Shown: piece by piece, positions 281 through 47,541 of the stretch | How the letters are laid out: every line of letters starts with the position of its first letter | How positions within the stretch are numbered: position 1 is the stretch's first letter | Program-made: the position numbers and the translations under genes | Notes under the pieces: model-generated | Databases searched by the model: none | Told to the model about the DNA's origin: nothing | Seen by the model: the letters and a program-made list of their open reading frames with translations, nothing else | Source: Macrostomum lignano | Taxonomy: Eukaryota | Direction: 5' to 3' | Length of the DNA stretch: 60,915 nt | Assembly (NCBI GenBank): GCA_002269645.1 | Contig: NIVC01004093.1 | Location: forward strand, 1-60,915

Positions 281-460
281 GATTTTGGGTCCCCTTGGAC
301 TGATAGTTTTATAGTTAGGGAAATTTTTAGAAGAGAATTATCAAGAGTCAAAAAAGCAACAAGGAGTTCCACTGTAAAAAACAGTGCATCATATTTTACG
401 AGTGTGTTCACTCCGCCTTGCTGCGCGACCCAGCAAGGCCACGCTGTTGCCAAGCCCCAA

Positions 461-3400
461 TTACCATAGACAGCAACGTAACGAGCCAACCAGACAGATT
501 AGGTAAACAATCAAAATCCCCATAGCAACTAATTTGTCGCTAATTGCCACAGTATCTACAGTCAGATTAACGGCTCCCGTAAGCAGATTAGCCAATAGGA
601 AATAAGCCAGACTACACCGGCCAATCAGAGCTAGCACAGGCGAACACGACCGATCGATGGAGCCGAGGCAGAGCAGCCGGCCGATGGTGAGCATCAACAG
701 CACCTGACAGCAGGCGGCTAGGCAGGTGATCAGGAATCCGGCATTGAACAGAAGCCGAGAAGCTCAGTTACGATAGGCGGCAACTTGACAGAGGCCACAG
801 TCAGGGCCCATGGCAGGGCCACGATGGCTAGCAGTAGCAGGGCCACGAGATCAGGCGGTTGGCGTCTGGGATGACGAGAGGATTGAATAATTATTGTAGC
901 GGTTAACTGTTAGTTTATTTCAGAAACTTGTGCTATAGATCACTATAGATCGTATGATATAGACATCCTAATACAAAAATTGATTGTTTATAGACAACAT
1001 TGATCATAGTCTATAGAAACGCTATAGAGATCCCAGTCTATAAACACGTCATATAGATCCTAGAGTATAAAAAACGCCATATATAAATAGATCCCAGTCT
1101 AAACACGCGCTATATATAGATAGATCCCAGTCTATAGATACACTACATAGATCCCAGTCTATAGATACACTACATAGATCCACTACATAGATACACTACA
1201 TAGACGCTATTATTCTGGTGCTTGACTGGGTGCTACGGACTGCTCTGCCTTCCAACGACGACGGCTTCCTGCTGCGGCGACGCGTGGGTCGACGCCAACC
1301 GGAGAGACGGCTCAGCGTGCCTGGCTACGCCGATGACCTCGCCCTGCTGTCCTCGACCGCCGAGGGCGCCCAACGACAGCTGGATAGGCTGGTTGCCGTT
1401 GCGGCGAGCGTCGGCCTGGTGGTCAACACGCAGAAGACCGTCGTGCTATGCGTGCCGGACGACACGAGGTTGCAATCTTCTGCCGAGGCGCTGACGGACA
1501 GGCGAGTGAGCTTCCAAGATGTCAGCAGTTCGTCTACCTCGGCGGTCTGGTTCCCGACGTTCGCGAGGATCTGCGGCGTCGCCGAGGACTTGCCTGGGCT
1601 GCCTTTCGTTCTATAGGTCAGTCCTGCAGTCCGAGGCCCTACCGGACCGCCAGAGGGCGGCGCTGTTCCAGGCGGTGATCGAAACCGTCCTGTTATACAA
1701 CGCCGAGACCTGGACGCTGACAGACTCGCGCTCGAGGCTCAAGTCGACGCGGCGCACGCTGGCCTGCTGCGCGCCGCCTTCAAGATCGGCAACGAGCGAG
1801 TCACCAACATGGCGCTCTACCATCGCGCCGGCCTGGCCCGTCCTAGCGATCTGCTGCGCCGTTGGCGACTCCAGCTGGCAGGCCACGTCATCCGCGCCGA
1901 GGCCTACTGTCCGGAGCCGGTGCAGGAGGCTGCTGCTACTTACGTTGCAGGCACCCTACCGGCGGGGACAAGCGAGGACACGGCGCTACGTCGACTGTCT
2001 GCTGGCTGACGCCGGCGCCCCGGACTCTGCCGGCGGTGCGGCCTTTGTTTGCGCCCAAGCTTCGAAGCGTGCCATCTGACGTTGCTTTTTACGACCCGGC
2101 AGCGTACTCTGTTGTTTTGTTGTATAGATCCCAGTCTATAGATACACTACATAGATCCCAGTCTATAGATACACTACATAGATCCCAGTCTATAGATACA
2201 CTACATAGATCCAGTCTATAGATACACTACATAGATCCCAGTCTATAGATACACTACATAGATCCAGTCTATAGATACACTACATAGATCCCAGTCTATA
2301 GATACACTACATAGATCCCAGTCTATAGACACGCCATATATTGATTCCAGTCTATAGAGTATAGATACACTATATAGATCCCAATCTATAGATATACTAT
2401 ATAGATCCGGGTCTTTAGACACGCTATATAGAGCATGGTCTATAGACACGCTGCGCATAGAGTAAGATCTCAGTCTTACGATGTCGAAAGATCTCAATCT
2501 CTAGACACGCTAGAGATACTAGCCTAGCAATGAAACCCGTCGCACCTGCAGCAGTCGACTCAGTTCCGACGCGCAATCGTCGACCAATAGCGGCGCCGGC
2601 GCAATAGATGGCGCAGTAGGGCGGCAGCGACATCAGGCCCTCCTTGTTGGCCACCAGCGGCCACAACAGGTGCCGATCGCCGCTAGCCAAAAGAAACTCG
2701 GCCCCACCGAACGGCAGCACCAGGAGGCAGTGTCCGGCGGCGAGAACCAGCGACCAGAGCCCCGGCCGGCCGGACAGCGCAGGCCAGACCGCTCGGAGAC
2801 AGGCCAGGGTGATGAAGAAGTTCCAGTGCACTCCATACTCGGTGACGTGCTCCTGCGTGTCGTGGATTGTTTGGTTGGAGGCGGGGTTGTTAGCCTTCAT
2901 CCACAACAACATCCTCGGAATAAAACGCCTCGAATGTATGTAAAATTCCAAACAAGATCATTAGCATAAAAATCCCTAATAGATATACCTGTAGATATCC
3001 CCAAGATGAGAATTCCCCAATAAGATCCCCCAGATGAAAAATCCCCAAAAATATCCCCAAGATGAGAAATCCCCAAATATCTTAAGGATGAGAAATCCCC
3101 AATAAGAAAAAATCTTCCAAAATATCCCTTAAATGGGAAATCCCCAAAATTTCCCTAAGATGGAAATTCCCAAAAATATTCGCAAGATTAGAAATCCAAA
3201 TCTCAAGCAAAAATCCTCGAATAGAAAAATCCCTTTAAAAGATCCCAGGATATTACCTGATAATCCGAAGCCTTCACAGCCAGAGTCCTCGCCAGTCCGA
3301 GCAGCGCCAGCGGCAGACAGGCGCCAACCAGGGATCGGCGCCATCGCGACATTGAAAACGGAGTCGGCGCCGGCGCCAGCAAGCCGCTGGCGAAGGCAAA

Positions 3401-3796
3401 CGCCGGAGCGCCGACGTCCATGAGACCGACGCCGGCGGACTCGGCCTTGGCCAAGCGGCGGGGCATGGCCGGGAAATCCACGGCCAGAATGGCGACGGAT
3501 GTCTGCAGCAGCAGGAGGGCCTGCGGAATGAAGGGTGGGCGGGGACTGTCCGTGTAACCTCTTTTCTTGATGAATCTGTGTGCTTGGGGCGAAGTGTGCG
3601 TCTGTCTGTCCGTCTGTCTATTTGCTTGTCTATCTGTCTGTCTGTCTGTCTGTCTGTGTCTGTCTGTCTATCTGTCTGCCTGTCTGTCTGTCTGTCCCTC
3701 TGTCTGTCTGTGTCTGTCTGTGTCTATCTGTCTGCCTGTCTGTGTCTGTCTGTCTGTCTGTCTGTCTATCTGTCTGCCTGTCTGTCTGTCTGTCTA

Positions 3797-3827
<31 letters not shown>

Positions 3828-3840
3828 GTCTGCCTGTCTG

Positions 3841-3895
<55 letters not shown>

Positions 3896-4130
3896 GTCTG
3901 CCTGTCTGTGTCTGCCTGTCTGTGTCTGCCTGTCTGTTTCTGCCTGTCTGTGTCTGCCTGTCTGTGTCTGCCTGTCTGTGTCTGCCTGTCTGTGTCTGTC
4001 TGTCTGTCTGTCTGTCTGTGTCTGCCTGTCTGTGTCTGCCTGTCTGTGTCTGTCTGTCTGTCTGTCTGTCTATCTGTCTGCCTGTCTGTCTGTCTGTCTA
4101 TCTGTCTGCCTGTCTGTGTCTGTCTGTCTT

Positions 4131-4211
<81 letters not shown>

Positions 4212-4214
4212 TTG

Positions 4215-4257
<43 letters not shown>

Positions 4258-4690
4258 GTGTGTCTGTCTGTCTGTCACGCACCTGGAATTCCTTGAACAG
4301 CGGCCTGGGCTGGGGCGGCTCGACAACAAAGTCAAAGTTGTTCCGCTGAGCGAAGGGCAGCAGCAGCAGCAGGCAGGCGGCAGCGGCGCAGACCAGTTCG
4401 GTCACGTGATCGGCCAGGACTGTCAGCTGCAGCACCGCCGAGCAGCAGAGAAGACCGGCTTCAAGCCAGCCAATCAGACGCAACAGACGACTGTTGCCAT
4501 GGCAACAGCATCGCAGCTGAGCGGTCAGCGCCAGCAGCAGACAGGGCAGGGTGAGATGCAGCCAGATTTCCACCAGACTGCATCCGCCGTGACCCGAGAC
4601 GAACGCTTCGTGCGCGGCTTTTCGAGTCGCCTTGTCGCCATGGTTACTAGGGCTACTACTAATATTAGTTAACGTTGCCATGGAGACCAT
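461..4690 (-). CDS. PIGW: GPI inositol acyltransferase PIG-W/GWT1 (4 exons)
   Basis: Exons ~4690/4641-4283, 3520-3257, 2852-2546 and 865-461, with GT-AG junctions in matching phase. Motifs: HEAFVSG, AILAVDFPAMPRRLAKAE..G.GLMDVG, YQEHVTEYGVHWNFFITL, NKEGLMSL, FLLANLLTGAVNL. The last exon needs frame correction (probable missing bases), and the start codon is ambiguous. Confidence 0.92.
940..2460. repeat. ~27-bp minisatellite (ATAGATCCCAGTCTATAGATACACTAC) split by the LINE
   Basis: Units at ~940-1210 and 2123-2460. Confidence 0.85.
1211..2122 (+). mobile_element. 5'-truncated, frameshifted RTE-like non-LTR retrotransposon in PIGW last intron
   Basis: RT motifs YADDLALL, GLVVNTQKT, FVYLGG and ETVLLYNAETWTL are spread over three frames, with a short (GTT)-rich tail. 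Confidence 0.8.
3595..4276. repeat. (TGTC)n microsatellite, PIGW intron 1
   Basis: Direct reading. Confidence 0.95.
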
Positions 4691-5055
4691 AAATTTCGAA
4701 CGTATTAATCAACAGGTAGCTGGAGAACAGGCAGTAGAGATAGCGGAACCAGACCAGCTGGCTGAGGTGGTGCCGCATGCAGCGCAGCGGCGTCAGGAGG
4801 CGGCTGGGAAGCGTGACGAAGAGGGCCGTCGCCGGCGAGGGGTCGAATGCGACAGAGAATGCTCCAGCAGGGCCGGCAGGATGGCCAGGACACCTGCAAG
4901 GCGTTTGTGAACGAAAAGAGTGGCGCTCGGTTAGGCTACGATGTGTCTGCGTTGTGAGAGCGGCCGCTTGATTGACAGACAGACAGAGAAACACGGACAA
5001 GCATAAAGAATGGACAGCAAGAGAGAAGCAGGCAGACAGACGGAGACATACACTA

Positions 5056-5092
<37 letters not shown>

Positions 5093-5329
5093 CACAAAGA
5101 CAGACAGACAGGCAGACAGACAGAGAGACAGAACAGACAGCCAGACGGACAGACACCAGACAGACAGACAGACAGACAGATAAACAGACAGACCGTCAGA
5201 TAGACATTAAGAGACAGACAGACACACATAACAGACAGACAGACAGACAGACATGAAAAACAGACAGACAGTCAGATAGACATTAAGAGACAGACAGACA
5301 GACAGTCAAACAGACAGACAGACACACAA

Positions 5330-5361
<32 letters not shown>

Positions 5362-6921
5362 GTGACACACAGACAGTCAGCTCACCCGAATACTTCCTAG
5401 CCAGTCCGACAGTCCTCAGCAGCAGCACAGGCACAGGCCTATCCCGACGCAGTCGGTGGCTGGCGCAGCGGCTCAGAGCCCAGCGTTGCAAAGCCCTGTG
5501 ATTGGCGTGGCCGCTCACCCCGCCGCTGTCAAAGGTGGCTAAGCAGTCAATCTGCCACTCGTCAATCAGTCCAGATACGCAATCGTCAATATGAGCCGCC
5601 TGCCAATCAATCGAGTTGCTATCCGGAAGTCTAGAATCGTTCACTATTCGAAGCCTATTGACCGACTGTCCGAACCCTTCGGTCCAAGCGAGTGTCAGCT
5701 CGGACACGCGAATATCGCCAAGTCCGTAATAATTGCCGGTGGATAAGCAGGCCAGATACAGTTCCCAACGATGGTTGCTAGGCGACTCAGACTGGGCGGA
5801 TAGGGCCAACAATAGAGGCGCAAAGAACATGCATTCGTCGTCCGGATGAGCGGTAACCAATAGCAACCGGAGAGGCGACTGTTCAGATGTGGCTGCGCTC
5901 TGTGCGAAAAAGGGTGTCAGACTCTGTTTGAGAATCTGAGAGGGTGTCAGACTCTGTTTAAGAATCTGAGAGGGTGTCAGACTCTGTTTAAGAATCTGAG
6001 AGGGTGTCAGACTCTGTTTGAGAATCTGAGAGGGTGTCAGACTCTGTTTAAGAATCTGAGAGGGTGTCAGACTCTGTTTGAGAGTCTGAGACGGTGTCAG
6101 ACTCTGTTTTAGAATCTGAGAGGTGTCAGACTCTGTTTTAAGAATCTGAGAGGTGTCAGACTCTGTTTGAGAATCTGAGAGGGTGTCAGACTCTGTTTAA
6201 GAATCTGAGAGGTGTCAGACTCTGTTTGAGAATCTGAGAGGGTGTCAGACTCTGTTTTAGAATCTGAGGGTGTCAGACTCTGTTTTAGAATCTGAGAGGG
6301 TGTCAGACTCAGTTTGAGGATGCAAGAGGGTGTCAGACTCTGTTTGATGATCTGAGAGGGTGTCAGACTCTGTTTGATGATCTGAGAGGGTGTCAGACTC
6401 TGTTTTAGAATCTGAGAGGGTGTCAGACTCTGTTTTAGAATCTGAGAGGGTGTCAGACTCTGTTTGAGAATCTGAGAGGGTGTCAGACTCTGTTTTAGAA
6501 TCTGAGAGGGTGTCAGACTCTGTTTGAGAATCTGAGAGGGTGTCAGACTCTGTTTGAGAATCTGAGAGGGTGTCAGACTCTGTTTGAGAATCTGAGAGGG
6601 TGTCAGACTCTGTTTGAGAATCTGAGAGGGTGTCAGACTCTGTTTGAGAATCTGAGAGGGTGTCAGACTCTGTTTGAGAATCTGAGAGGGTGTCAGACTC
6701 TGTTTGAGAATCTGAGAGGGTGACAAACCCTCGAGAACTCTTGCCGACAGAAAAGGCCATATCAGATAAATAAAAAACCTCCTCACCGGGTCTCTCAAGC
6801 CAATTAGCTGGTTGCCAAGTCGCAGCAAGCAATTGTTACTCAAACGACAAGCTATCAGGTAGACTGCAACAATCAGTACTGTGAGAGATATTAACAGAAT
6901 TGACAGCGTCAGATGCGACGG
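4665..6921 (-). CDS. PIGL: N-acetylglucosaminyl-PI de-N-acetylase PIG-L
   Basis: Exons 6921-6787 (hydrophobic anchor LTLSILLISLTVLIVAVYLI), 5899-5386 (AHPDDE, CLSTGNYYGLG, TFDSGGVSGHANH) and 4893-4665 (HLSQLVWFRYLYCLFSSY, stop 4667-4665). One -1 frame slip near 4839-4842. A possible initiator micro-exon ATGTATACC|GTAAGT lies at 8438-8430. Confidence 0.92.
4970..5380. repeat. (ACAG)n microsatellite, PIGL intron
   Basis: Direct reading. Confidence 0.93.
5911..6724. repeat. 30-bp minisatellite (GAGGGTGTCAGACTCTGTTTGAGAATCTGA), PIGL intron
   Basis: Direct tandem units. Confidence 0.95.
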
Positions 6922-7067
6922 CTGAGTGGGGGAATCACCTGCCGAACTTGGTAGCTGGGACTGAAAACGGTGTTTAGCGAGTAGACTGCAGACTTTTTTT
7001 TACCAAATACCTGGGGTAATGCAATACCTATTACAGGATTACAGGCCAATCTAAAACCACTTACAAG

Positions 7068-7885
7068 ACACCTTCAGCCACTTACAAGACACCTTCAGCC
7101 ACTTACAAGACACCTTCAGCCACTTACAAGACACCTACAGCCATTTACAAGACACCTACAGCCACTTACAAGACACCTACAGCCATATACAAGACACCTA
7201 CAGCCATTTACAAGACACCTACAGCCACTTACAAGACACCTACAGCCACTTACAAGACACCTTCAGCCACTTACAAGACACCTTCAGCCACTTACAAGAC
7301 ACCTACAGCCATTTACAAGACACCTACAGCCACTTACAAGACACCTACAGCCATTTACAAGACACCTACAGCCATTTACAAGACACCTACAGCCACTTAC
7401 AAGACACCTACAGCCACTTACAAGACACCCACACTCACTTACAAGACACCTACCACCCACCTACAAGACACCTACACCCACTTACAAGACATCCACACCC
7501 ACTTACAAGACACCCACACCCACTTACAAGACACCTACACCCACTTACAAGACACCCACACCCACTTAAAAGACACCTACATCCACTTACAAGACACCCA
7601 CACCCACTTACAAGACACCTACCACCCACTTACAAGACACCCACACCCACTTACAAGACACCTACCACCCACCTAAAAGACACCTACACCCACTTACAAG
7701 ACACCCACACCCACTTACAAGACACCTACACCCACTTACAAGACACCTACACCCACTTACAAGACATCCACACCCACTTACAAGACACCTACCACCCACC
7801 TAAAAGACACCTACCACCCACCTAAAAGACACCTACACCCACTTACAAGACACCTACACTACCTACAAGACACCTACATCCACTT
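7068..7885. repeat. 21-bp minisatellite (CACTTACAAGACACCTACAGC)
   Basis: Direct tandem units with a variant gradient. Confidence 0.95.
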
Positions 7886-8894: not shown

Positions 8895-11718
8895 TTACTG
8901 ACTCAGACGCGGATCTTTGGTTGGTGGACGCTTAGGTGTAGGCGACGGCGACGGAGCAAACGCAATGAAGCCATCGGAGTGCTTGTACTGCTCGGCATTG
9001 TCATAGTTAATCCGATGCAGATGGCCTGAACTGGTTGAATCTGTCCCCATTGACCTCAGACTGTTGAGACGGCCGCCCATGGCTTCTAGGATAGCCTGGC
9101 CAGCGCATAGATCCCATTTTTTTATCGGACCCGCGTGGAGATAGTTGTCAGCTAATCCCTGAATGAACAACCAAGTGGGGATTTTAGTAGTATATTAGTA
9201 TATTTAGATTAATAACCTATGAATATATGAAACACTCTCAAATTTTTAAGACACCGAATGGCTCATGTCGATTACAAGACTACAGATACAATGCAAAATT
9301 CATTCTAAAAAACCGTCAGCGGATGCTGAGATGCTGAATGACTCACATGAAGTTTATAAAATACAAAATGACTTATAGGGAATTGCTATGATTCCAAACG
9401 GCTCATGGGGAATCGTTAGGATGCCAAGTGGCTCATGGGGAATCGCTAGGATGCCAAGTGGCTCATGGGGAATCGCTAGGATGCCAAGTGGCTCATGGGG
9501 AATCGCTGGGATGCCAAGTGGCTCATGGGGAATCGCCCTGATACCAAGTGGCTCATGGGGAATCGCTAGGATGCCAAGTAGCTCATGGGGAATCGCTGGG
9601 ATGCCAAGTGGCTCATGGGGAATCGCTAAGATGCCAAGTGGCTCATGGGGAATCGCCCTGATACCAAGTGGCTCATGGGGAATCGCTAGGATGCCAATTG
9701 GCTCATGGGGAATCGCTAGGATGCAATCGCCAAGTGGCTCATGGAGAATCGCTAGGATGCCAAGTGGCTCATGGGGAATCGCTAGGATTCCAAGTGGCTC
9801 ATGGGGAATCGCTAGGATGCAATCGCCAAGTGGCTCATGGGGAATCGCTAGGATGCAATCGCCAAGTGGCTCATGGGGAATCGCTAGGATGCAATCGCCA
9901 AGTGGCTCATGGAGAATCGCTAGGATGCAATCGCCAAGTGGCTCATGGGGAATCGCTAGGATGCAATCGCCAAGTGGCTCATGGGGAATCGCTAGGATGC
10001 AATCGCCAAGTGGCTCACGGGGAATCGCTGTGATACCAGAGTTTCTAAAGAAGTGTTTAGACACCAAGACTTATAGAAAACGGCTTGTCACGCGGTGCAA
10101 GCCTGAAGTGGTTAAACTGCACAATCCTCCGAAGAGGGACACACACTAGTCTACATATACTACATGTAAAATTTCCAAACTTTTTTCTTACCTTACTAAG
10201 CAGCAGTAGTTTATAACCCGCCCCGGCAGCCGATAACAAGTCGACGGACTCGTTAGGGAACAATTTTCTAGCCGTGCTATTCAATTGAGCGCCCGATGAC
10301 TGCGCGAAATCAGCACCCGCCTTCGTCGGTGACTCTTATCGGCGGCGCCTTTGATGTGTGAGTCCGATTTTAATACGTGCTTATCCAGCACAATAGGTAA
10401 ATTTAATTGCTCTTTTAGACTGTCGGATACGCGAGAATTGCGCCAAGCCCAATAGGTTTTATTAGCGAATGGAAAATGCAGCACGCCTAGCAGGGGTGTG
10501 CCTCGGTAGGCCACGCACACCTGTTTTAGAGGTATTGTTGCTTGCTTATTACTTCATAAGTGCGATTTCTAACTAATTAACTAAATCTCTTTCTCCCCCT
10601 CTAACTCATTGTCTCTATGCTGCATTTCACTGTCTCTCTGCCTCTATCTCACCGTCTCTCGGCCTCTATCTCACCGTCTCTCTGCCTCTATCTTGCTCTC
10701 TCTCTGCCTCTATCTCACTGTCTCTCTGCTTCTATCTCACTATATCTCTGCCTCTATCTCACTGTCTGCCTCTATCTCACTGTCTGCCTCTATCTCACTG
10801 TCTCTCGGCCTCTATCTCACTGTCTCTCTGCCTCTATCTTACTCTCTCTCTGCCTCTATCTCACTGTCTCTGCCTCTATCTCACTGTCTCTCTGCTTCTA
10901 TCTCGCTATATCTCTGCCTCTATCTCACTGTCTCTGCCTCTATCTCACTGTCTCTCTGCCTCTATCTCACTGTCTTTCTGCCTCATCGCAACGTCTATCT
11001 CTGTCTATCTCACGGCATCTGCGTCTAGCTTTTCCTGACATCCCGGTCTCAATAGCTCCTATATTTTACTCACGTATAAGCACATATTAGCAGTTAGATT
11101 TCAAGCCTCTAAGTCAATAAGTTTATTCGTTTTTTTGGCCATCTATTAATAAGTGTTAAGCCGGCTTGGTAATTAAAAACGCACCTGAACAGACACGTAC
11201 TGCAGCAGGTGCTCAGTAAACTCTTGCGTACCATCAAGCGGATCCACCCACACCAGCACATCGTTAGAATTGACAAAGAAGTCGTGTCTCAAAGGCTCCA
11301 AATCTGGATGGCGATGACTGGCCAAAGCCAGGGCCCGATAATCCACTGGGGCCGATTGCGACTCCTCCGACACAACATGTAACCATGGAAACGATTTATG
11401 AAATCCGAATACTAATTCGGCATTCGAAGCTAAATCCGCCTTAGTAACTGGGGGCGCCGAGTCGCTAATCTGAGCACTGGATTTATTAATTTTTGCTGCC
11501 GCTCGATGCCGCAAAATCTGTTGGCCAGCTCGTTCGCACAGCTCAATGCTGACTGACAGCAGCTCCTTGATTGAGACGCCGCGGCCTCTGCCTAGCAGGG
11601 GCATCTCGGTGCGCAGCAGGAACAGCAGTGCCGCTGCACTTATCAGGCAGAAGATGCCCAGCTTGTTTAGCCTGAGACGGCACACCGCCAGCAGTTGGCA
11701 ACGGGTTTGATATTGCTG
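8895..11718 (-). CDS. IMPAD1: Golgi PAP phosphatase, IMPAD1/BPNT2-like (inositol monophosphatase superfamily)
   Basis: Exons ~11718-11185 (N-terminal TM, TKADLASN, VVSEE, WVDPLDGTQEF), 10520-10192 (ISRSH, AGAGYK; one -1 slip near 10290) and 9158-8895 (IKKWDLCAGQAILEAMGG). No in-frame ATG was found at the 5' end. Confidence 0.88.
9375..10030. repeat. 30/36-bp minisatellite, IMPAD1 intron
   Basis: GGATGCCAAGTGGCTCATGGGGAATCGCTA units, some with a 6-bp insertion. Confidence 0.95.
10605..10985. repeat. ~22-bp CT-rich minisatellite, IMPAD1 intron
   Basis: TCTCTGCCTCTATCTCACTG units. Confidence 0.85.
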
Positions 11719-23234: not shown

Positions 23235-26200
23235 TCAGTCCTCAGCGTCAACAAGTTGCCCTTCATCGTCACTACTGGCGTCCTGATCAGCACGCTGAGC
23301 AGACTGGGTCCGTTGCAGACACGCTCGCTTCAACTTGTTGACATGCACGACGCGCCCCTTGATCTCCCCGTCCGTGTAATTGATCGGCCGCACCAAGTAG
23401 TTGACAGGTGATGTCTTGCGCATGACTTTAAATGGGCCTGTCCACGGTGATTGATGCTTCGGAGGCAGACAGTTGGTCCTGGACAGCACAGCAGGCGGAA
23501 CGAACAGCCACACTAGATCGCCGGTGCGAAACTTGCGCTTCTGGGCTTTCAGATCGTAGTACCGCTTCTGCCGTCGTTGAGCCGCGCCAGTTGACCTCCG
23601 CACAGCGTCAAAGGCGTCCTGCAGTCGTTGAATGGTCTCTACTGCGTACTGGCCGACGACGGATGGAGGCTCTGGGGACCGATAGACAACGTCCAATGGC
23701 AGAACCACCTCCCGGCCCGTCATCAGGAAATGTGGGGAAAATCCGGTCGTCGCGCTGATGCTGCTTCGATAGGCTAGGAGACAGTACGGCAGGGCGTCCT
23801 CCCAGTCCAGCGGATCGACAGTTTGAAGGTGGCAGCGCAACATCTGATGGAGTGTCCGATGAAATCTCTCCACGAGGCCGTCACATTGAGGATGATAGCC
23901 CGACGTTCGAGTCTTGTCGACCTCCAATAGTGTACAGAGACTGCGAATGATGCGGCCATCGATGCTCTTGCCGCGGTCGGAGTGGAGAATATGCGGAGCA
24001 CCCCACCTGGAGATCCAGTTGTTGAAGAGGGCCTTGGCAATTGTCGTCGCCTTCTCGTCCGGAATCGGCACCAGCTCCGTCCACTTGCTGAAGTAGTCGA
24101 CGATGCTCAGGATCCGATCGTTGCCGTTTCTGGAAGCGCCGACCTTGACAATGTCGAACCCGACACGCTGCATTGGAAACCCTGCAGTGATGGACTGTAG
24201 CGGCGCCCGCTTGATAACCGGAGTCTTTGCCCGCTGGCAAACCTGGCATGACCGAACGGCCAACCGGACGCTCTCCGACATTTTTGGCCAGTAGCAACGC
24301 GTCTTTAGGCTGGCCAGCGTCTTGACTTCGCCCAGGTGGCCGACGTTGTGAATCTCGTCGACAAATTCGCGTTGTCGGCAGCGGGGAATGACGGGTACTG
24401 GCTTTGTGTTGACCAGCCTGTGCAGTGTACCGTTCACGAAACACAAGTCATGCACCTTCTGCGCCAGCACCAGGCTCTCCGGCGGTACTCGGTCGCGTTG
24501 TCGGTCGGTAAACCTAGTCTTGCCGTCGGCCAGCAGTCGGAACACCGGACTGATAACCGGATCCTGCAGCTGAAGCATACGTAGCGTCGGTGGCCTGTTG
24601 TCTGCCGCTGGCGCTGCGGATTCATCTTCGTTGGTGTCGTCCTCGCTGCTGCTGCTTTCTTCGCTGTCGTCCGACCGGGGCTGATGGATTTGCTTGCGCC
24701 TTGATGGCACGGTGCCGACGCAGACATGCACATTGTCGGTCTGAACAGCTTCGTCGGTAGCCGTCGACACTAGCTTGATGGTCGCTGCGTTGATCTGGGC
24801 GGCAGCGGCGGCATCACTGTTGGCGTCGGTCTGGCAGGCAACCGAGGATGTCGTCCTGCTGGTGGTCTCATTTGTTGGTCGACACACCCGACACTGGTTG
24901 GTACAGCGCTGCTGCTGACGGGACAGCGCATCGGCGTTGTTGTGTTGACGGCCCGGCCGATAGAGTACTCTGAAGTCGAACTCGTCTAGCGTCTGCAGCC
25001 ACCGCGCGAGTTGACCTTCGGGCTCCTTGAATGTCAGCAGGTGCGTTAGAGACTGATGATCGACCCGCACGGTGAACTTCCGAGGCAGCAGGTAATTCCG
25101 GAACTTCCTGACATGCTCAACGACGGACAGCAGCTCCCGCCTCGTTACACAGTAGTTGCGCTCGGCTTTTGTTAGTGCTCTGCTGGAGTACGCGATGACT
25201 CGTTCTTCGCCCGCCTGCAGTTGAGAGAGTACCGCACCAATGGCGCAGTCGCTGGCGTCAGTGTCCAGAATGAACTCCGAGCTGGTCGCACTAGTATCCG
25301 GGAAGGCGAGGATTGGAGCAGAGGTCAGTGTTGCCTTCAGTTGGTCGAATGCTTCTTGGGCCTTGGACGTCCACTGAAACCTTTCTGTCGGAACCGTCAG
25401 GCGTCGTAGCGGCTCGGCGATCTTTGAATAATCCCGAATGAACCGTCTATAGTAGGCTGCGAGACCTAGGAAGCTCTTGACCTCCTTGGAAGTTCGGGGT
25501 GTAGGCCAGTCTCGGATCGCAGCAGTCTTTGACTCGTCGACGGTGATACCCGACTTGGAAACTCGATGGCCCAAGACGATCATCGTGGTGTTGGCGAAAT
25601 GGCATTTAGATGGCTTCAAGCGTAGGTTCGCGTCCCGCAGCCGCTCGAACACCGCCCGCAGCCGATAGTTGTGCTCCTCGATAGTCCGGCCCATGACAAT
25701 AACGTCGTCGATGAAGACCAGGCACGCTTGCCAGGTCAGGCCTTGGAGCACCAGCTGCATGAGGCGTTGAAAGGTTGCCGGGGCATTGCGCAGACCAAAC
25801 GGCATGACGTTGAACTCGAAGAGGCCTTGATGGCAGATGAAAGCAGTTTTCTCTTTGTCGCGCTCCTCGACCTCAACCTGCCAGTAGCCACTCTCCAGAT
25901 CGAGTGCCGAGAAGTAGGCGTTGCCTTGCAGCGCATCGAGTGTGTCGTCGATCCTCGGAATTGGAAAAGCGTCCGGCTTGGTGACCTCATTGAGCAGTCG
26001 ATAGTCTAAGCAAAAGCGCGCTGTCCCGTCCTTCTTACGAACAAGCACGATTGGCGAAGCCCAAGGCGATGAAGACGGCCGGATTACTCCTTTGGTCAGC
26101 ATGTCGTCGATCAATTCGGCCTGCTTGTCGATGACTGGACGCGCTGCACGCCGCAAACCCTGCCGGATCGGCCTTGCCCCGCCGGTGTCGATGCGATGCT

Positions 26201-27470
26201 GCAGGACTGCAGTTCGACCAGCATTGCCAGGGGATGCAAAAACGGTGCTGAACTCTAACAGCAAATCCTTGACCGACTGTTGCTCTTCGACGGAGATAGA
26301 GCTTTCGATGTGCACGTCGTTCAGCCAGTTGGTGCGAGGTAAGTCCGTCGCTAAAGCTGTTGTTGATGTAGCCGTGCTGACCGCGACCGTCGCCGCCGTG
26401 CTGCCAGCGGCCGTCGCCGCCGTGCTGCCAGCGGCCGTCGCCGCCGTGCTGCCAGCGGCCGTCGCCGCCGTGCTGCCAGCGGCCGTCGCCGCCGTGCTGC
26501 CAGCGGCCGTCGCCGCCGTGCTGCCAGTGGCCGTCGCCGCCGTGCTGCCAGTGGCCGTCGCCGCCGTGCTGCCAGCGGCCGTCGCCGCCGTGCTGCCAGC
26601 GGCCGTCGCCGCCGTGCTGCCAGTGGCCGTCGCCGCCGTGCTGCCAGTGGCCGTCGCCGCCGTGCTGCCAGCGGCCGTCGCCGCCGTGCTGCCAGCGGCA
26701 CCCGATTGCTGAACGAATGGCTGACTTCCTAGCGGGGAAAAGATGCCAACAATGTCGCCGTCGCTGATGTTGACCGTGTGGTCGTCGACGTTGATGACTG
26801 CTAGGCCCATGCCTCTCTCGACCAGCTTGGCAACACAACGACCCACCAGGAGCCCCTGTGATCTTGTGCCGGTGACGACTCCTGGACACTCCGATCGCGT
26901 CCACGAGGCCGACTTTGCTGGTTTAACGGGGATTATCCAGCGCTCCCCTGGCTGCAGCTGCACGGAGGCCGCTGATACGAGCTTGCAGGTCTGTGCTGCC
27001 TCTTTACTTTTTCGAGCTGGAATCGACACGCCTAGGCTGTTGAAAGTGATGCAACCGGCTTGGAGATGGACCGAGACGTCGTGTTCACTGAGGAAGTCAC
27101 AGCCCAGGATGACGGACGTCGGGTGAAGCTTCTCGAGTACGACGAAACGATGATGGACTTGTACGGTTCCCAGAGTCACTGCCAAAGTAGTCTCGCCCAG
27201 CACAGACTGTAGGTTGCCATCCACGCCTCTTATGATGATGCTGCTGGGCTGCAGCCGCCGCCTAGCTTTCTTACATATGTCATCGCTGATGCAGGACACC
27301 TCTGCCCCGGTGTCGATCAGACAGTGGCGCCGTCGTCTAAGGATGCGCGCTGTGACGAAGCGCACCTGGCCAGGCTGGCAGCTGCTGAGGCGTGGTGTTG
27401 AGGCCGAATGCGTTAGTGCTGAGAGGGCCGGTGCTGGCCTCGTGAACCAGCCCCCTCGGCGTTTGGGCAA
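23235..27470 (-). CDS. pol: Gypsy Pol (protease, RT, RNase H, integrase), -1 frame relative to gag
   Basis: 1411-aa open frame with IDTGA, RFCLDYR, FIDD, TDASD, H..GH/C..C, the DDE core and GPF. Confidence 0.95.
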   Translation of the reverse strand: MPKRRGGWFTRPAPALSALTHSASTPRLSSCQPGQVRFVTARILRRRRHCLIDTGAEVSCISDDICKKARRRLQPSSIIIRGVDGNLQSVLGETTLAVTLGTVQVHHRFVVLEKLHPTSVILGCDFLSEHDVSVHLQAGCITFNSLGVSIPARKSKEAAQTCKLVSAASVQLQPGERWIIPVKPAKSASWTRSECPGVVTGTRSQGLLVGRCVAKLVERGMGLAVINVDDHTVNISDGDIVGIFSPLGSQPFVQQSGAAGSTAATAAGSTAATATGSTAATATGSTAATAAGSTAATAAGSTAATATGSTAATATGSTAATAAGSTAATAAGSTAATAAGSTAATAAGSTAATAAGSTAATVAVSTATSTTALATDLPRTNWLNDVHIESSISVEEQQSVKDLLLEFSTVFASPGNAGRTAVLQHRIDTGGARPIRQGLRRAARPVIDKQAELIDDMLTKGVIRPSSSPWASPIVLVRKKDGTARFCLDYRLLNEVTKPDAFPIPRIDDTLDALQGNAYFSALDLESGYWQVEVEERDKEKTAFICHQGLFEFNVMPFGLRNAPATFQRLMQLVLQGLTWQACLVFIDDVIVMGRTIEEHNYRLRAVFERLRDANLRLKPSKCHFANTTMIVLGHRVSKSGITVDESKTAAIRDWPTPRTSKEVKSFLGLAAYYRRFIRDYSKIAEPLRRLTVPTERFQWTSKAQEAFDQLKATLTSAPILAFPDTSATSSEFILDTDASDCAIGAVLSQLQAGEERVIAYSSRALTKAERNYCVTRRELLSVVEHVRKFRNYLLPRKFTVRVDHQSLTHLLTFKEPEGQLARWLQTLDEFDFRVLYRPGRQHNNADALSRQQQRCTNQCRVCRPTNETTSRTTSSVACQTDANSDAAAAAQINAATIKLVSTATDEAVQTDNVHVCVGTVPSRRKQIHQPRSDDSEESSSSEDDTNEDESAAPAADNRPPTLRMLQLQDPVISPVFRLLADGKTRFTDRQRDRVPPESLVLAQKVHDLCFVNGTLHRLVNTKPVPVIPRCRQREFVDEIHNVGHLGEVKTLASLKTRCYWPKMSESVRLAVRSCQVCQRAKTPVIKRAPLQSITAGFPMQRVGFDIVKVGASRNGNDRILSIVDYFSKWTELVPIPDEKATTIAKALFNNWISRWGAPHILHSDRGKSIDGRIIRSLCTLLEVDKTRTSGYHPQCDGLVERFHRTLHQMLRCHLQTVDPLDWEDALPYCLLAYRSSISATTGFSPHFLMTGREVVLPLDVVYRSPEPPSVVGQYAVETIQRLQDAFDAVRRSTGAAQRRQKRYYDLKAQKRKFRTGDLVWLFVPPAVLSRTNCLPPKHQSPWTGPFKVMRKTSPVNYLVRPINYTDGEIKGRVVHVNKLKRACLQRTQSAQRADQDASSDDEGQLVDAED
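26350..26700 (-). repeat. 24-bp coding tandem repeat within pol (AAGSTAAT)
   Basis: In-frame, between protease and RT. Confidence 0.95.
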
Positions 27471-28537
27471 TTGCGTCGGATGTGGCCCGGCTGACCGCAG
27501 CCGAAACAGTTGGAACTAGCCGGTGATTGCTGTCGTTGCTGTCCTCGACCGCCAGATGAGGCAGGCTGCTGAGGCATTAGTGGTTTCGGTGGCGCTGAAA
27601 GTTGGCTCTGTGGTGGTCTCGGTTGCTGGGGCTGGATTTCGCCACGGCAAGCATCCATGTAGGCCCGGGTTTCTCGAAGCTGCTGGGCTATTCGTAGAAC
27701 CTGCTCCACAGTGCTTGGTGGTGTTGGTTGATTCAGTAGTCGCTCGGTGACGTAGCCGTCATTGAGACCATGCATGAACTGCTCGCTAACTGTCTGTTGG
27801 ACGTAAGCCTGAGCTCTTGGGTCCGGGTATGCCCTTGCAGCTAGCCGTTGAAGCTCCGTCAGGTACGTTTCGAAGCTCTCCTCTGGTCGACGCTGCCGAG
27901 CACGGAACTCGCGGCGAAGTAACGCTGCACTCTTGGCCCCGCCGTGACGAGACCGGAGGTGTTCAACGAGGCCCTCATAGCGGACACCAGGTAGCTGGTC
28001 CAGGGTTGTCCCCGGTGGCAGTCCGACGTAGGCACACTGGATCGCCAGCCAGGTGGTGTACGTTGCAAAAGCCGGTCCGAGGAACGCAGTCAGGGTGTTG
28101 ATCTTGTCGGCGTCTCGAAGGCCTGGGAACCGGCTAATATAGGCGCTGATCCTGATGAGAAAGTCGTCGAAATCCTCCCGACCGTTGTACGGTGCAGGCT
28201 TAGGTACTGGCGGAAGAGCCGGTACTGGATTGTAGTCTGGCAGCGCTGCGTATCCGTGAGCTGGAGGATAGGCGTACTGCTGCATTGCTGAGGCCTGCCC
28301 TGACGCTTGGTCGATGTCTTCAAGGAACGGGTTGGTTGAGACTTCCGCCGAGTGTGCCCTCTGAAGGTCGTTGGCAACGAGGAAGGGATTTGTGGCTTCG
28401 CTGACTGTGGTCATCGACACGAAGGGGTTGGACGCGTTCGTAGACTCTGTAGAAACGGAAGCTGCCTCGTCGCCTGCGTTGCGCCGTCGTCCGACGAGAC
28501 GTCCACGTAGTTCCAGGTAGTCGTCGTTATTCCACAT
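27413..28537 (-). CDS. gag: Gypsy Gag
   Basis: First ATG at 28537. Capsid-like F..RI.AY/RQRRPEESFETY segment and CCHC knuckle CFGCGQPGHIRRNC. Confidence 0.9.
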   Translation of the reverse strand: MWNNDDYLELRGRLVGRRRNAGDEAASVSTESTNASNPFVSMTTVSEATNPFLVANDLQRAHSAEVSTNPFLEDIDQASGQASAMQQYAYPPAHGYAALPDYNPVPALPPVPKPAPYNGREDFDDFLIRISAYISRFPGLRDADKINTLTAFLGPAFATYTTWLAIQCAYVGLPPGTTLDQLPGVRYEGLVEHLRSRHGGAKSAALLRREFRARQRRPEESFETYLTELQRLAARAYPDPRAQAYVQQTVSEQFMHGLNDGYVTERLLNQPTPPSTVEQVLRIAQQLRETRAYMDACRGEIQPQQPRPPQSQLSAPPKPLMPQQPASSGGRGQQRQQSPASSNCFGCGQPGHIRRNCPNAEGAGSRGQHRPSQH

Positions 28538-28561
28538 GTGGAAAACTGGCGTGGTCGCCAA

Positions 28562-46818: not shown

Positions 46819-47541
46819 GATATTTTTCCAGGATTTGATCAAACGTGATTGATTGATGCCGTTAAGCAAGCAGTGTGCAGTTCGTACTGCATGCGTTTAT
46901 AGCTGCATGGACTGGGCCCGTGTGACGACAAATTTTTCAGGGCGCTTTGCCATTGGCTGTTGCATAAATTTTAGCTTTATGCTTAGATATTCAAATGTGC
47001 ATTGTATTGAGCAGTGTCAACACAGCTTTCTTTAGCTAGCTAGATAAATATTATATAAGACCCAAGTCAATGTTTGGGGTGCCTCGACTACTATTTGCTC
47101 ACTTTAATTACATTTATATAATACAGCGCAAGGCATTCACTTTGTGTGAATGGGCAAAGGCTTTCTCAGAGAGTCGCCACTGCACTGCACAGAGCTGGCT
47201 GGAGTAACAGTAGAAGTATAGAGTGTACAATCTTCAAACCGGTTCAGTGCTTTGAGTAACGTGTTTTGTAACGACTTGCGCTAGCGCCCGAGCCTGGAAG
47301 CTGCCAGCATGGTTGGCATATGGATTGAGTTAAACAACAAAACAAAATTTAAATAATGATGATGGAGCCCCTAAGGCTATCGTCTATGTATGCACAGATA
47401 GCGTTTCTGTATGCTCTTCATTAAAAAATGCATGGCCACTTGAAAGATGAGTTTATACGATTTCATGCATGGTTTGAAAAACTGACCCTAAAGAGAAAGA
47501 AAAAATGCGTGCCGTTGAAAGAATGTAACGGTGTAGGTATA

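What the first reader, a model, noticed from the sequence alone, without database searches (positions are those of the whole stretch)
4600..4900. PIGL and PIGW, consecutive GPI-anchor enzymes, are joined with no intergenic space (dicistron, operon or fusion)
Seen: the PIG-L C-terminus (..SSYLLINTFEIYGLHGNVN*) stops at 4667-4665. The PIG-W frame is already open there, with in-frame ATGs at 4690 and 4681 overlapping PIGL by 26 and 17 nt. A Kozak-like ACCATGG at 4641, 23 nt after the PIGL stop, would give MADKATRKAAHEAFVSG if one base is missing, the same error type seen elsewhere in the window. There is no room for a poly(A) signal or promoter. Known: PIG-L de-N-acetylates GlcNAc-PI and PIG-W acylates the product; they are separate, unlinked genes in mammals and yeast. 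Inference: three models fit. (a) A dicistronic mRNA with reinitiation or overlapping ORFs. (b) An SL-resolved operon using TAG acceptors in the spacer. (c) A single bifunctional PIGL-PIGW fusion masked by an indel or a small intron. Any of these would be a pathway-coupled eukaryotic gene unit that I do not know to be described.
Basis: partly seen in the sequence, partly recalled or inferred. Interest (0 to 1): 0.88.

Follow-up and report, generated by a model that had tools for sequence, protein, structure and literature searches.

The report
Overlapping PIGL–PIGW operon junction, Macrostomum
Two GPI-anchor genes of the flatworm Macrostomum lignano really do abut with overlapping stop and start codons, but this is most likely one junction in a spliced-leader operon, a gene arrangement already known to cover about 15% of this animal's genes, and not a new kind of gene unit.

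Summary
On the minus strand PIG-L stops at TAA 4667-4665. The PIG-W frame has ATGs at 4690 and 4681, inside PIG-L, and the Kozak-like ATG at 4641 is out of frame.

The window is Macrostomum lignano contig NIVC01004093.1. The 100 nt around the junction are identical in all four assembled copies, so no base is missing there. The window does carry four private 1-nt deletions elsewhere in these two genes.

M. lignano trans-splices about 30% of its genes to a leader ending in ATG, and about 15% of its genes lie in operons. The RNA-seq-guided annotation puts the upstream IMPAD1-like gene and PIG-W in one transcriptional unit, with PIG-L between them and no CDS called for it.

PIG-L has no genomic ATG. 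A consensus acceptor (TTTTCAG|) sits exactly in frame, so the leader probably supplies its start codon.

The spacer TAG acceptors cannot yield PIG-W. The only consensus acceptor nearby (CTCCAG|, 4720) lies inside PIG-L's last exon.

Fusion models exist in UniProt and depend on a 49-nt "intron". Splice signals, conserved PIG-L C-terminal residues inside that segment, the GenBank CDS start and membrane topology all argue against them.

Verdict: an ordinary operon with an unusual overlapping junction. No RNA reads were available, so the exact mechanism is unresolved.

The parts
8895..9160 (-). Last coding exon of the upstream IMPAD1-like inositol-monophosphatase-family gene (GenBank BOX15_Mlig004071g4); stop codon at 8897-8895
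   Evidence: ORF; PF00459 127 bits on the paralogous protein P0100; gene names
7057..7885 (.). 21-nt tandem repeat array filling much of the IMPAD1-to-PIG-L spacer. The 1933 nt from stop to acceptor falls to about 1100 nt once the array is subtracted.
6961..6966 (-). TTTCAG acceptor (ccgTTTTCAG|) matching the M. lignano SL acceptor motif [T/C]TNCAG. It ends exactly on a PIG-L codon boundary and is the putative trans-splice site that gives PIG-L its AUG.
   Evidence: motif from PMC8629364. Inferred, no reads seen.
6787..6960 (-). PIG-L exon 1 (58 codons, SQLPSS...GLRDP, N-terminal membrane anchor ILLISLTVLIVAVYLIAC). There is no in-frame ATG between the upstream stop and the exon end.
5386..5899 (-). 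PIG-L exon 2 (catalytic core, AHPDDE and GHANH motifs)
4665..4893 (-). PIG-L exon 3 including TAA 4667-4665. A 1-nt deletion private to this window at about 4845 breaks the frame here only.
4720..4725 (-). CTCCAG|, the only [T/C]TNCAG acceptor-like site near the junction. It has 80% pyrimidines in the 20 nt upstream, lies inside PIG-L exon 3, 53 nt before the PIG-L stop codon, and is separated by 29 nt from ATG 4690. It is the candidate SL acceptor for PIG-W mRNA.
   Evidence: Inferred.
4653..4701 (-). 49-nt GT..AG segment (ac|GTTCGA...AGTAGTAG|ccc) removed in UniProt fusion models A0A1I8HSS1, A0A1I8HWW2 and A0A1I8IAQ7. It contains PIG-L's last 11 codons and stop, and both overlapping ATGs.
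4679..4690 (-). The two ATGs (4690-4688, 4681-4679) in the PIG-W frame, inside the PIG-L coding sequence. GenBank starts the PIG-W CDS at 4690.
4631..4664 (-). 34 nt from the base after the PIG-L stop to the AAG at 4633-4631. It holds four TAG acceptors (G at 4659, 4656, 4653, 4647), the out-of-frame Kozak-like ATG 4641-4639, and AAG| at 4633-4631. AAG| is the only AG here where a leader-supplied AUG would be in the PIG-W frame (MATRKAAHEAFVSG).
4283..4690 (-). PIG-W exon 1 as annotated (136 codons). GWT1 homology begins at K24 (KAAHEAFVSG).
3257..3520 (-). PIG-W exon 2
2546..2852 (-). PIG-W exon 3
408..865 (-). PIG-W exon 4, with three private 1-nt deletions (843, 763, 479) that truncate the GenBank protein of this contig to 338 aa

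Best explanation
The junction is a real, error-free intercistronic junction inside a spliced-leader (SL) operon of Macrostomum lignano: IMPAD1-like gene, then PIG-L, then PIG-W, all on one strand and in one annotated transcriptional unit. PIG-L and PIG-W are separate proteins. PIG-L has no genomic start codon. Its first exon begins at a consensus acceptor (TTTTCAG|, 6961) that sits in frame, so the 35-nt leader, which ends in AUG, most likely supplies the initiator codon. PIG-L ends at its own TAA (4665). PIG-W can only be translated in frame from AUG 4690 or 4681, both inside PIG-L's last 26 nt, or from a leader AUG spliced at AAG|4631. My preferred mechanism is that the PIG-W mRNA is made by trans-splicing at the strong acceptor CTCCAG|4720 inside PIG-L's last exon. 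The leader AUG then opens a 5-codon mini-ORF (MLPVD*), and PIG-W starts at AUG 4690 or 4681. The two cistrons therefore overlap, and one precursor RNA can mature into a PIG-L-coding or a PIG-W-coding mRNA but not both. Shown: the sequence, its agreement across copies, gene identities, selection on both ORFs, and membership of one annotated unit. Inferred: every splice and translation step. Confidence is about 0.75 for a co-transcribed SL operon with separate proteins, and about 0.4-0.45 for the specific 4720 acceptor.
For: Organism and locus: the window is NIVC01004093.1 of M. lignano Mlig_3_7. [quoted passage not shown] Transcriptional units were assembled from RNA-seq and cut at SL and poly(A) peaks, and gene names carry the unit's prefix (PMC5730564). 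In three loci the IMPAD1-like gene and PIG-W carry one prefix and consecutive numbers: Mlig004071g4/g3, g8/g9, and Mlig007363g1/g2. The same gene order holds in four copies. The junction is identical in four copies. Both ORFs show pN/pS of 0.15-0.34 among copies. PIG-L has an in-frame TTTTCAG| and no ATG before its membrane anchor in any copy. Use of the SL AUG as initiator is established in flatworms (Cheng et al. 2006, as cited in PMC9851317). Spacer TAG acceptors give M*, M*, MP*, M*. CTCCAG|4720 is the only motif match with a pyrimidine tract as strong as the best real acceptors of these genes, one of six motif hits in 2328 exonic nt. The GenBank PIG-W CDS is complete from ATG 4690, while the same pipeline reports 5'-partial CDSs elsewhere (IMPAD1 starts 'VCRL'). 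The annotated PIG-W transcript therefore begins upstream of the in-frame TGA at 4711-4709. PIG-L's conserved C-terminal pattern N-x-hydrophobic-x-x-hydrophobic (NTFEIY) is read through to the TAA.
Against: I saw no RNA reads, so no SL site or poly(A) site is directly shown here. The consecutive gene numbers mean that only one experimentally supported cut was made between IMPAD1 and PIG-W, whereas my model needs two SL sites (6961 and 4720). One of them was either undetected or does not exist. The CTCCAG motif is partly forced by the conserved peptide F-S-[SR]-Y, so its presence is weak evidence. The N-terminal extension implied by AUG 4690 or 4681 (23-26 residues before HEAFVS, against 6-10 in about 70 homologues) is AT-rich and looks non-coding in composition. 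No poly(A) signal for PIG-L is visible. Adjacency could not be tested in any other flatworm.
Confidence: 0.5

Rival explanations
1. Bifunctional PIG-L-PIG-W fusion: a 49-nt intron (4701-4653) is spliced out, removing PIG-L's last 11 codons and stop and joining ...SSYLLINT to PSNHGDKATRK... in frame.
For: Three UniProt models from the ML2 assembly (A0A1I8HSS1, A0A1I8HWW2, A0A1I8IAQ7) have exactly this junction and carry both PF02585 and PF06423. The segment has GT..AG ends and the right length (49 = 3n+1) to join the two frames. A fusion would explain why neither gene needs its own ATG.
Against: The donor GTTCGA and acceptor TAG do not fit the M. lignano consensus GT[G/A]AG and CAG. Mean intron length is 1.1 kb, and every other intron of these genes is at least about 350 nt. 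The segment encodes F-E-I-Y, which aligns with a conserved hydrophobic pattern at the PIG-L C-terminus; the fusion replaces it with P-S-N-H. The RNA-seq-guided GenBank CDS of PIG-W starts at ATG 4690, inside the 'intron', in all four loci. The GWT1 N-terminus is luminal, while PIG-L acts on the cytoplasmic face with a flip step in between (PMC11502805, PMC7125958), and the 13-residue linker has no membrane span. No other PIG-L-GWT1 fusion appears among the best 120 hits or best 150 hits. The models are partial (no Met, no stop) and may be predictor artefacts.
Confidence: 0.1
2. True bicistronic mature mRNA (SL-PIG-L-PIG-W) with no processing between the cistrons. Ribosomes that terminate at UAA 4665 reinitiate at the AUGs 17 or 26 nt upstream, giving coupled translation.
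For: The annotation has only one numbered gene boundary between IMPAD1 and PIG-W, and PIG-L has no CDS of its own. That is what one would see if PIG-L and PIG-W lie on one processed mRNA and only the longest ORF was kept. Two in-frame AUGs sit within 26 nt of the stop, the geometry used in viral termination-reinitiation (my own knowledge of calicivirus and pneumovirus M2 cases).
Against: Reinitiation after a 305-codon ORF is inefficient in eukaryotes without a dedicated element. The core UGGGA motif of such elements is absent from the 110 nt upstream of the AUGs (read from the sequence). Leaky scanning is excluded by internal AUGs in PIG-L. SL operons offer a simpler route in this species.
Confidence: 0.12
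3. SL trans-splicing at AAG|4631, so that the leader's AUG itself starts PIG-W as MATRKAAHEAFVSG...
For: This is the only AG in the region where the SL AUG is in the PIG-W frame. It puts Met 7 residues before HEAFVS, the modal spacing in about 70 homologues. GC-rich coding composition resumes about here. It is the mechanism inferred for PIG-L. Branch-point-like CTAAT and TTAAC lie 30-40 nt upstream.
Against: AAG preceded by a purine-rich stretch is a poor acceptor and does not fit [T/C]TNCAG. Four TAGs closer to the branch point should be preferred. A cut at this site would have given a 5'-partial GenBank CDS, but the annotated CDS is complete from 4690.
Confidence: 0.12
4. Assembly error: one base is missing after ATG 4641, so PIG-W really starts at the Kozak-like ACCATGG, 23 nt after the PIG-L stop, downstream of spacer TAG acceptors.
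For: ATG 4641 has the best context and lies where homologues start (10 residues before HEAFVS). The TAG acceptors would neatly neutralise the SL AUG with an immediate stop. This contig has 1-nt deletion errors elsewhere.
Against: Four separately assembled copies, including the diverged paralogue, are identical over the junction. Three ML2-assembly models read the same frame. The private errors never coincide between contigs.
Confidence: 0.04

Closest known systems
SL trans-spliced operons of Macrostomum lignano (Wudarski et al. 2017, PMC5730564; Ustyantsev and Berezikov 2021, PMC8629364)
   Same: Same species and same strand. The genes lie in one RNA-seq-assembled transcriptional unit, and both are conserved housekeeping genes. 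[T/C]TNCAG acceptors are present. Two- and three-gene units are the norm.
   Different: The typical repeat-adjusted spacing is about 100 bp. Here the downstream gene's only usable genomic AUGs lie upstream of the upstream gene's stop, so the spacing is negative. The SL sites at this locus were not seen by me.
SL1-type operons of C. elegans and operons of Ciona intestinalis (no intercistronic sequence; summarised in PMC12582326)
   Same: There is essentially no spacer between the cistrons. 3'-end formation of the upstream mRNA and trans-splicing of the downstream mRNA compete on one precursor.
   Different: In those systems the poly(A) site abuts the acceptor outside the coding sequences. Here the best acceptor lies within the upstream coding exon, and no poly(A) site is identifiable. 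[quoted passage not shown]
Flatworm SL 3'-terminal AUG used as initiator methionine (Cheng et al. 2006 J Biol Chem 281:733, as cited in PMC9851317)
   Same: PIG-L, and possibly PIG-W, lacks a genomic start codon and has an acceptor in frame with the leader's terminal AUG.
   Different: That mechanism was shown in Schistosoma mansoni. Here it is inferred from sequence only.
Chimeric gene models produced by annotating polycistronic precursors in flatworms (PMC12582326)
   Same: The UniProt PIG-L-PIG-W 'fusion' models look like this class: two operon genes merged into one model.
   Different: Here the merge needed an invented or rare 49-nt intron. I could not inspect the evidence behind the ML2 models.
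Viral termination-reinitiation (calicivirus, pneumovirus M2-1/M2-2)
   Same: Restart AUGs lie 17 and 26 nt upstream of the stop.
   Different: This is a cellular gene with a long upstream ORF, and no UGGGA-type motif is seen. It is a resemblance only.

Membership tests
PIG-L / GlcNAc-PI de-N-acetylase (PF02585) | Profile match above the curated cut-off | tested here: met
   56.6 bits against a cut-off of 28.2 on P0095, whose PIG-L part is the same as the four-copy consensus PIG-L up to ...LLINT, after which the model switches to PIG-W
PIG-L / GlcNAc-PI de-N-acetylase (PF02585) | Conserved metal-binding and catalytic motifs AHPDDE and H-x-N-H, and the C-terminal H-x-S-Q...WFR motif | tested here: met
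   Invariant columns A75 H76 P77 D78 D79 E80, H189 N191 H192, H272 S274 Q275 in alignment A2
PIG-L / GlcNAc-PI de-N-acetylase (PF02585) | Intact reading frame in this window | tested here: not met
   A private 1-nt deletion at about 4845 shifts the frame. The three other copies are intact. This is a probable consensus error of this contig.
GWT1 / PIG-W inositol acyltransferase (PF06423) | Full-length profile match | tested here: met
   290.6 bits, profile positions 2-432 of 437, on P0002, which is 100% identical to the window over exons 1-3
GWT1 / PIG-W inositol acyltransferase (PF06423) | Short N-terminus (Met 6-10 residues before KEAFVS) | tested here: not met
   The genomic in-frame ATGs give 23 or 26 residues. 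Only a leader AUG at 4631 would give 7.
SL-resolved operon (M. lignano definition, PMC8629364) | Adjacent genes on the same strand with repeat-adjusted distance under 1 kb | tested here: met
   PIG-L to PIG-W: -26 to +23 nt. IMPAD1 to PIG-L: about 1.1 kb after subtracting the 829-nt repeat, which is borderline.
SL-resolved operon (M. lignano definition, PMC8629364) | Downstream gene carries the SL (SL-containing reads at its 5' end) | not testable with these tools
   No read data were available. Only motif evidence exists: TTTTCAG| at 6961 and CTCCAG| at 4720.
SL-resolved operon (M. lignano definition, PMC8629364) | Genes belong to one RNA-seq-assembled transcriptional unit | tested here: met
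   IMPAD1 and PIG-W share the unit prefix and consecutive numbers in three loci. The naming rule is in PMC5730564. This is indirect, through names.
Bifunctional fusion protein | One continuous ORF after removal of a bona fide intron | tested here: inconclusive
   A 49-nt GT..AG segment gives a continuous ORF. Its sites are non-consensus, it encodes conserved PIG-L residues, and it contains the annotated PIG-W ATG.
Bifunctional fusion protein | The same domain fusion found in other organisms | tested here: not met
   Only the M. lignano models combine PF02585 and PF06423 among the hits. None of the best 150 of 1.84 billion representatives extends past the PIG-L part.
Termination-reinitiation dicistron | Restart codon within a few tens of nt of the upstream stop | tested here: met
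   AUGs lie 17 and 26 nt upstream of UAA
Termination-reinitiation dicistron | Upstream 18S-complementary element (UGGGA core) | tested here: not met
   No TGGGA occurs in 4800-4690 on the minus strand (sequence printed)

The most novel reading that the evidence does not exclude
PIG-L and PIG-W are expressed from one mature mRNA. Either they form a true bicistron, with PIG-W translated by termination-coupled reinitiation at the overlapping AUGs, or they form a spliced PIG-L-PIG-W fusion. In either case the cytoplasmic and luminal steps that flank GlcN-PI flipping would be produced in a fixed ratio from one message in an animal.
Probability: 0.2. Interest if true: 0.65.

Novelty: new member of a known kind. 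Interest (0 to 1): 0.3.

Why it matters
If the operon reading holds, this is one more of roughly ten thousand operonic genes in M. lignano, so the general finding is ordinary. Two points have some value.

First, the locus is a clean test case for how flatworm operons work when there is no spacer. The downstream gene's usable start codons lie inside the upstream coding sequence, and the upstream gene has no start codon at all. A single SL-primed RT-PCR would show whether trans-splicing occurs inside a coding exon and whether the leader AUG is used.

Second, it exposes annotation problems that users of this model organism should know. PIG-L has no CDS in the GenBank annotation of any of the four copies. 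UniProt carries partial PIG-L-PIG-W 'fusion' entries. This contig's copies of both genes are broken by single-base deletions.

Pairing of two GPI-pathway genes in one unit may reflect co-regulation. The rough chance expectation that some GPI gene has another as its downstream neighbour is a few per cent (my estimate from about 26 pathway genes among about 20,000). No comparative support could be obtained.

Tried and rejected
- **Gene names in the literature.** I looked for locus-specific statements under Mlig004071, Mlig010665, Mlig007363, PIGL and PIGW, in full text and in the supplements of PMC5816591, PMC5730564, PMC5173321 and PMC12582326. Nothing was found.
- **Wasik et al. 2015.** The ML2 genome paper is not held, so I could not learn how the fusion models were built.
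- **Transcript-derived proteins.** No transcript-derived M. lignano PIG-L or PIG-W proteins exist in the protein collection. The clusters hold only NCBI and UniRef entries, so Logan RNA contigs could not be used.
- **Adjacency in other species.** The profile search returned mostly fish PIG-L. Trichuris suis PIG-L has no GWT1 neighbour. The best Logan hit is a 2.6-kb contig with no GWT1 gene called on it. No flatworm orthologue was reached.
- **Full-length fusion profile.** I considered a PIG-L+PIG-W profile for the exhaustive HMMER search. I used P0095 alone instead.
- **Other splicing routes.** Cis-splicing of the PIG-L exon 2 donor to 4720 gives an immediate stop. The exon 1 donor to 4631 is in frame but would place PIG-W's N-terminus on the wrong side of the membrane. 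SL addition at the PIG-L exon 3 acceptor gives a long uORF followed by a PIG-L-frame AUG. All three were judged unlikely.
- **Displaced start codon.** 'ATG GCGACAAG GCGACTCG' could be an 8-nt duplication that displaced an ancestral start codon. A 5-nt repeat is too weak to claim this.
- **SL in the window.** There is no SL sequence or SL RNA gene in the window.
Full report
**What is in the sequence**

All features lie on the minus strand.
- The PIG-L-like gene has three exons: 6960-6787, 5899-5386 and 4893-4665. It ends ...SSYLLINTFEIYGLHGNVN* with TAA at 4667-4665.
- The PIG-W-like gene has four exons: 4690-4283, 3520-3257, 2852-2546 and 865-408.
- The PIG-W frame is open from TGA 4711-4709 and contains ATGs at 4690 and 4681. 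These overlap PIG-L by 26 and 17 nt.
- ACCATGG, with its ATG at 4641, lies 23 nt after the PIG-L stop and is in a different frame from PIG-W.

Every number in the finding is correct. Pfam confirms the gene identities. PF02585 PIG-L scores 56.6 bits and PF06423 GWT1 scores 290.6 bits over profile positions 2-432 of 437. The PIG-L catalytic motifs are invariant in an alignment with seven homologues.

**Where the window comes from**

A search with a conceptual PIG-L+PIG-W query returned two near-identical hits, both from Macrostomum lignano. Cluster listing and contig look-up show that the window is the whole 60,915-bp contig NIVC01004093.1 of assembly Mlig_3_7, GCA_002269645.1. Three further copies of the locus exist, on NIVC01000827.1, NIVC01005014.1 and NIVC01004692.1.

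The gene order at these loci is Claudin-like, IMPAD1-like (PF00459), [PIG-L], PIG-W. No single locus shows every flanking gene, because the Claudin-like or IMPAD1-like gene is uncalled or out of range at some. A large gene of about 660-1020 aa follows PIG-W at the three other loci, while this contig ends just past PIG-W. GenBank calls no CDS for PIG-L at any of the four loci.

**Is the junction an assembly error?**

No. An alignment of the four copies over 340 nt shows columns 201-300 identical in all of them. These columns cover the PIG-L stop, the spacer and all three ATGs. Substitutions and one indel occur on either side. Three UniProt models built on the older ML2 assembly read the same '..NHGDKATRK..' frame.

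This contig is error-prone elsewhere. It has private 1-nt deletions at about 4845 (PIG-L exon 3) and at 843, 763 and 479 (PIG-W exon 4). NIVC01005014.1 has one at the position matching window 6932. These explain the frameshifts I met when building the gene models, and the 338-aa truncated GenBank protein of this contig.

The four-copy consensus gives a PIG-L ORF of 305 codons plus stop and a PIG-W ORF of 479 codons plus stop. Between copies, pN/pS is 0.26-0.34 for PIG-L and 0.15-0.31 for PIG-W (small counts). Both frames are therefore maintained as read.

**The biological background makes the arrangement ordinary in kind**

- M. lignano adds one 35-nt spliced leader, CGGTCTCTTACTGCGAAGACTCAATTTATTGCATG, to about 30% of its genes.
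- About 15% of genes (10,458) lie in operons, mostly of two or three genes, with a modal repeat-adjusted spacing of about 100 bp.
- The acceptor motif is [T/C]TNCAG. Cis introns use GT[G/A]AG and CAG (PMC8629364).
- The Mlig_3_7 annotation assembled 'transcriptional units' from RNA-seq. It then cut them into genes at SL-read and poly(A)-read peaks, and gene names are the unit's cluster prefix plus .gN (PMC5730564).

In three loci the IMPAD1-like gene and PIG-W carry the same prefix and consecutive numbers: Mlig004071g4/g3 in this window, g8/g9 on NIVC01000827.1, and Mlig007363g1/g2 on NIVC01004692.1. RNA-seq therefore joined IMPAD1 through PIG-W into one unit. PIG-L, which lies physically between them, was not given its own number.

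The same pipeline does report 5'-partial CDSs, since the IMPAD1 proteins begin 'VCRL'. The absence of a PIG-L CDS is thus best explained by PIG-L sharing a processed transcript with a longer ORF.

**PIG-L has no start codon of its own**

In the PIG-L frame there is no ATG between the upstream stop and the catalytic core. The first Met is in AHPDDECMFF. Exon 1 begins right after ccgTTTTCAG|, a perfect [T/C]TNCAG match. This acceptor ends on a codon boundary, and it is present in all four copies, one of which reads ccaTTTTCAG. Adding the leader would give AUG-SQLPSS..., followed by the membrane anchor. Use of the flatworm leader's terminal AUG as initiator is established for Schistosoma (Cheng et al. 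2006, cited in PMC9851317). For this locus it is an inference.

**How could PIG-W be translated?**

I listed every AG from 4762 to 4578, with its upstream pyrimidine content and the ORF that a leader AUG would open.
- The four spacer TAG acceptors (G at 4659, 4656, 4653, 4647) give M*, M*, MP* and M*. The next AUG is 4641, which is out of frame and opens a 38-codon ORF. No later in-frame AUG exists before 'FPAMPRR', which lies in exon 2.
- AAG|4631 is the only AG where the leader AUG is in frame (MATRKAAHEAFVSG). It puts Met 7 residues before HEAFVS, the modal value in about 70 homologues, where the usual range is 6-10. It is a poor acceptor, however, and a cut there would have produced a 5'-partial GenBank CDS.
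- CTCCAG|4720 is the only motif match in the region. It has 80% pyrimidines in the 20 nt upstream, equal to the best genuine acceptors of these genes. It is one of six motif hits in 2328 exonic nt. It lies inside PIG-L's last exon, 53 nt before the PIG-L stop codon. Leader addition there gives AUG-CUA-CCU-GUU-GAU-UAA, then 14 nt, then AUG 4690. This fits the GenBank CDS, which is complete from 4690 and therefore needs a transcript that includes the in-frame TGA at 4711-4709.

I prefer the third route, with two caveats. The motif is partly dictated by the conserved peptide F-S-[SR]-Y. The N-terminal extension it implies is AT-rich.

**The fusion model**

UniProt A0A1I8HSS1, A0A1I8HWW2 and A0A1I8IAQ7 join ...SSYLLINT to PSNHGDKATRK.... 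On the genome this removes 4701-4653, a 49-nt GT..AG segment (and sequence). Several observations argue against it.
- GTTCGA and TAG do not fit the species' consensus. Mean intron length is 1.1 kb.
- The segment encodes T-F-E-I-Y. These residues align with NTFRAV, NTFQAI, NQFTRL, NELVEI, NDLGEV and NQLVLY at the C-termini of homologues.
- The RNA-seq-guided CDS of PIG-W starts inside the segment in all four loci.
- Cryo-EM places the GWT1 N-terminus in the ER lumen (PMC11502805). PIG-L acts on the cytoplasmic side, and a flip step separates the two reactions (PMC7125958). The 13-residue linker contains no membrane span.
- No other protein combines the two domains among the hits. An exhaustive phmmer search of 1.84 billion representatives with the fusion model gave 150 best hits, apart from the M. 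lignano fusion model itself, whose best matches almost all end by about residue 303, close to the end of the PIG-L part at residue 296; three run a little further (311, 315, 328), and none of the 150 has a GWT1 part.
- The models lack both Met and stop.

Chimeric models made from polycistronic precursors are a recognised annotation artefact in flatworms (PMC12582326). I give the fusion about 10%.

**A true bicistron**

A true bicistron remains possible, at about 12%. The single numbered boundary between IMPAD1 and PIG-W is what one would see if the only SL site were at PIG-L. In that case PIG-W would need coupled reinitiation at the overlapping AUGs. No UGGGA-type element is present upstream.

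**Comparison with what is known**

- The locus is a member of the M. lignano SL-operon class by position and by annotated transcriptional unit.
- It resembles the spacer-less SL1-type operons of C. elegans and the operons of Ciona (summarised in PMC12582326). It goes further than they do, because the downstream gene's usable start codons, and the best acceptor, lie inside the upstream coding sequence.
- In S. mansoni, all 45 operon pairs that were examined had an intercistronic distance of at least 5 bp.
- I could not test whether the adjacency is conserved in any other flatworm. Trichuris suis shows no PIG-L/GWT1 linkage.

**Verdict**

I classify the finding as a new member of a known kind with an unusual overlapping junction, of modest interest. 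One SL-primed RT-PCR, or a look at the existing SL and poly(A) read tracks, would settle the mechanism.

Noticed in passing
window 6961-6966 and 6787-6960 (minus): PIG-L has no genomic ATG before its membrane anchor. A consensus TTTTCAG| acceptor lies exactly in frame, so the start codon is probably supplied by the spliced leader. GenBank calls no PIG-L CDS in any of the four assembled copies.
   Followed up: partly
window ~4845, 843, 763, 479: Four single-base deletions private to this contig, relative to three paralogous contigs. All are in G or C runs within PIG-L or PIG-W coding exons, and they truncate the GenBank PIG-W of this contig to 338 aa. They are likely consensus errors, less likely a decaying redundant copy.
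   Followed up: yes
window 4631-4641 (minus): ATG-GCGACAAG-GCGACTCG: deleting the 8 nt GCGACAAG would put the Kozak-like ATG 4641 in the PIG-W frame and give MATRKAAHEAFVSG, the typical N-terminus length. This may be a displaced ancestral start codon, but the 5-nt repeat is weak evidence.
   Followed up: no
window 11685 (minus); L001 3723: The IMPAD1-like gene is annotated 5'-partial (protein starts VCRL) and has no ATG before its membrane anchor, so it may also depend on the leader AUG or on an unseen upstream exon. A UniProt ML2 model starts 'LQAVCRL'. Like the PIG-L model's 'FQSQLP', it begins with two extra codons of which the second is Q (in the PIG-L model the Q is the CAG of the acceptor).
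   Followed up: partly
window 1218-2079 (plus): ORFs on the opposite strand, inside PIG-W intron 3 and flanked by 27-nt tandem repeats, look by eye like a reverse-transcriptase fragment. One of them (1519-2079) had no Pfam hit at E<=0.001.
   Followed up: partly
window 3600-4276, 5029-5380, 5911-6722, 7057-7885, 1-287, 2124-2446: The introns and spacers of this locus are largely filled with tandem repeats: a GTCT/CAGA microsatellite in two introns, and 30-nt, 21-nt, 22-nt and 27-nt arrays. Several create long spurious ORFs.
   Followed up: yes
window 23235-28561 (minus): Apparently intact Ty3/gypsy-type LTR retrotransposon coding region. It comprises a gag ORF (zinc knuckle) and a 1411-aa pol ORF with protease, RT, RNase H and integrase, with an internal 'GSTAATA' repeat.
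   Followed up: partly
window 33484-34734 and 35642-37872 (plus): A single-exon zf-HIT protein gene is followed on the same strand, about 900 nt later, by a ZIP zinc-transporter gene in two exons. This may be another operon pair.
   Followed up: no
window 42776-46869 (minus): Ammonium transporter (PF00909) gene, with exons separated by long tandem-repeat-filled introns.
   Followed up: no
UniProt A0A1I8IAQ7 (P0094): This ML2 model lacks 8 residues (VSGHANHR), including conserved histidines. The gap equals a 24-nt stretch without canonical GT-AG ends, so it is either a real deletion in one copy or an assembly or model artefact.
   Followed up: no
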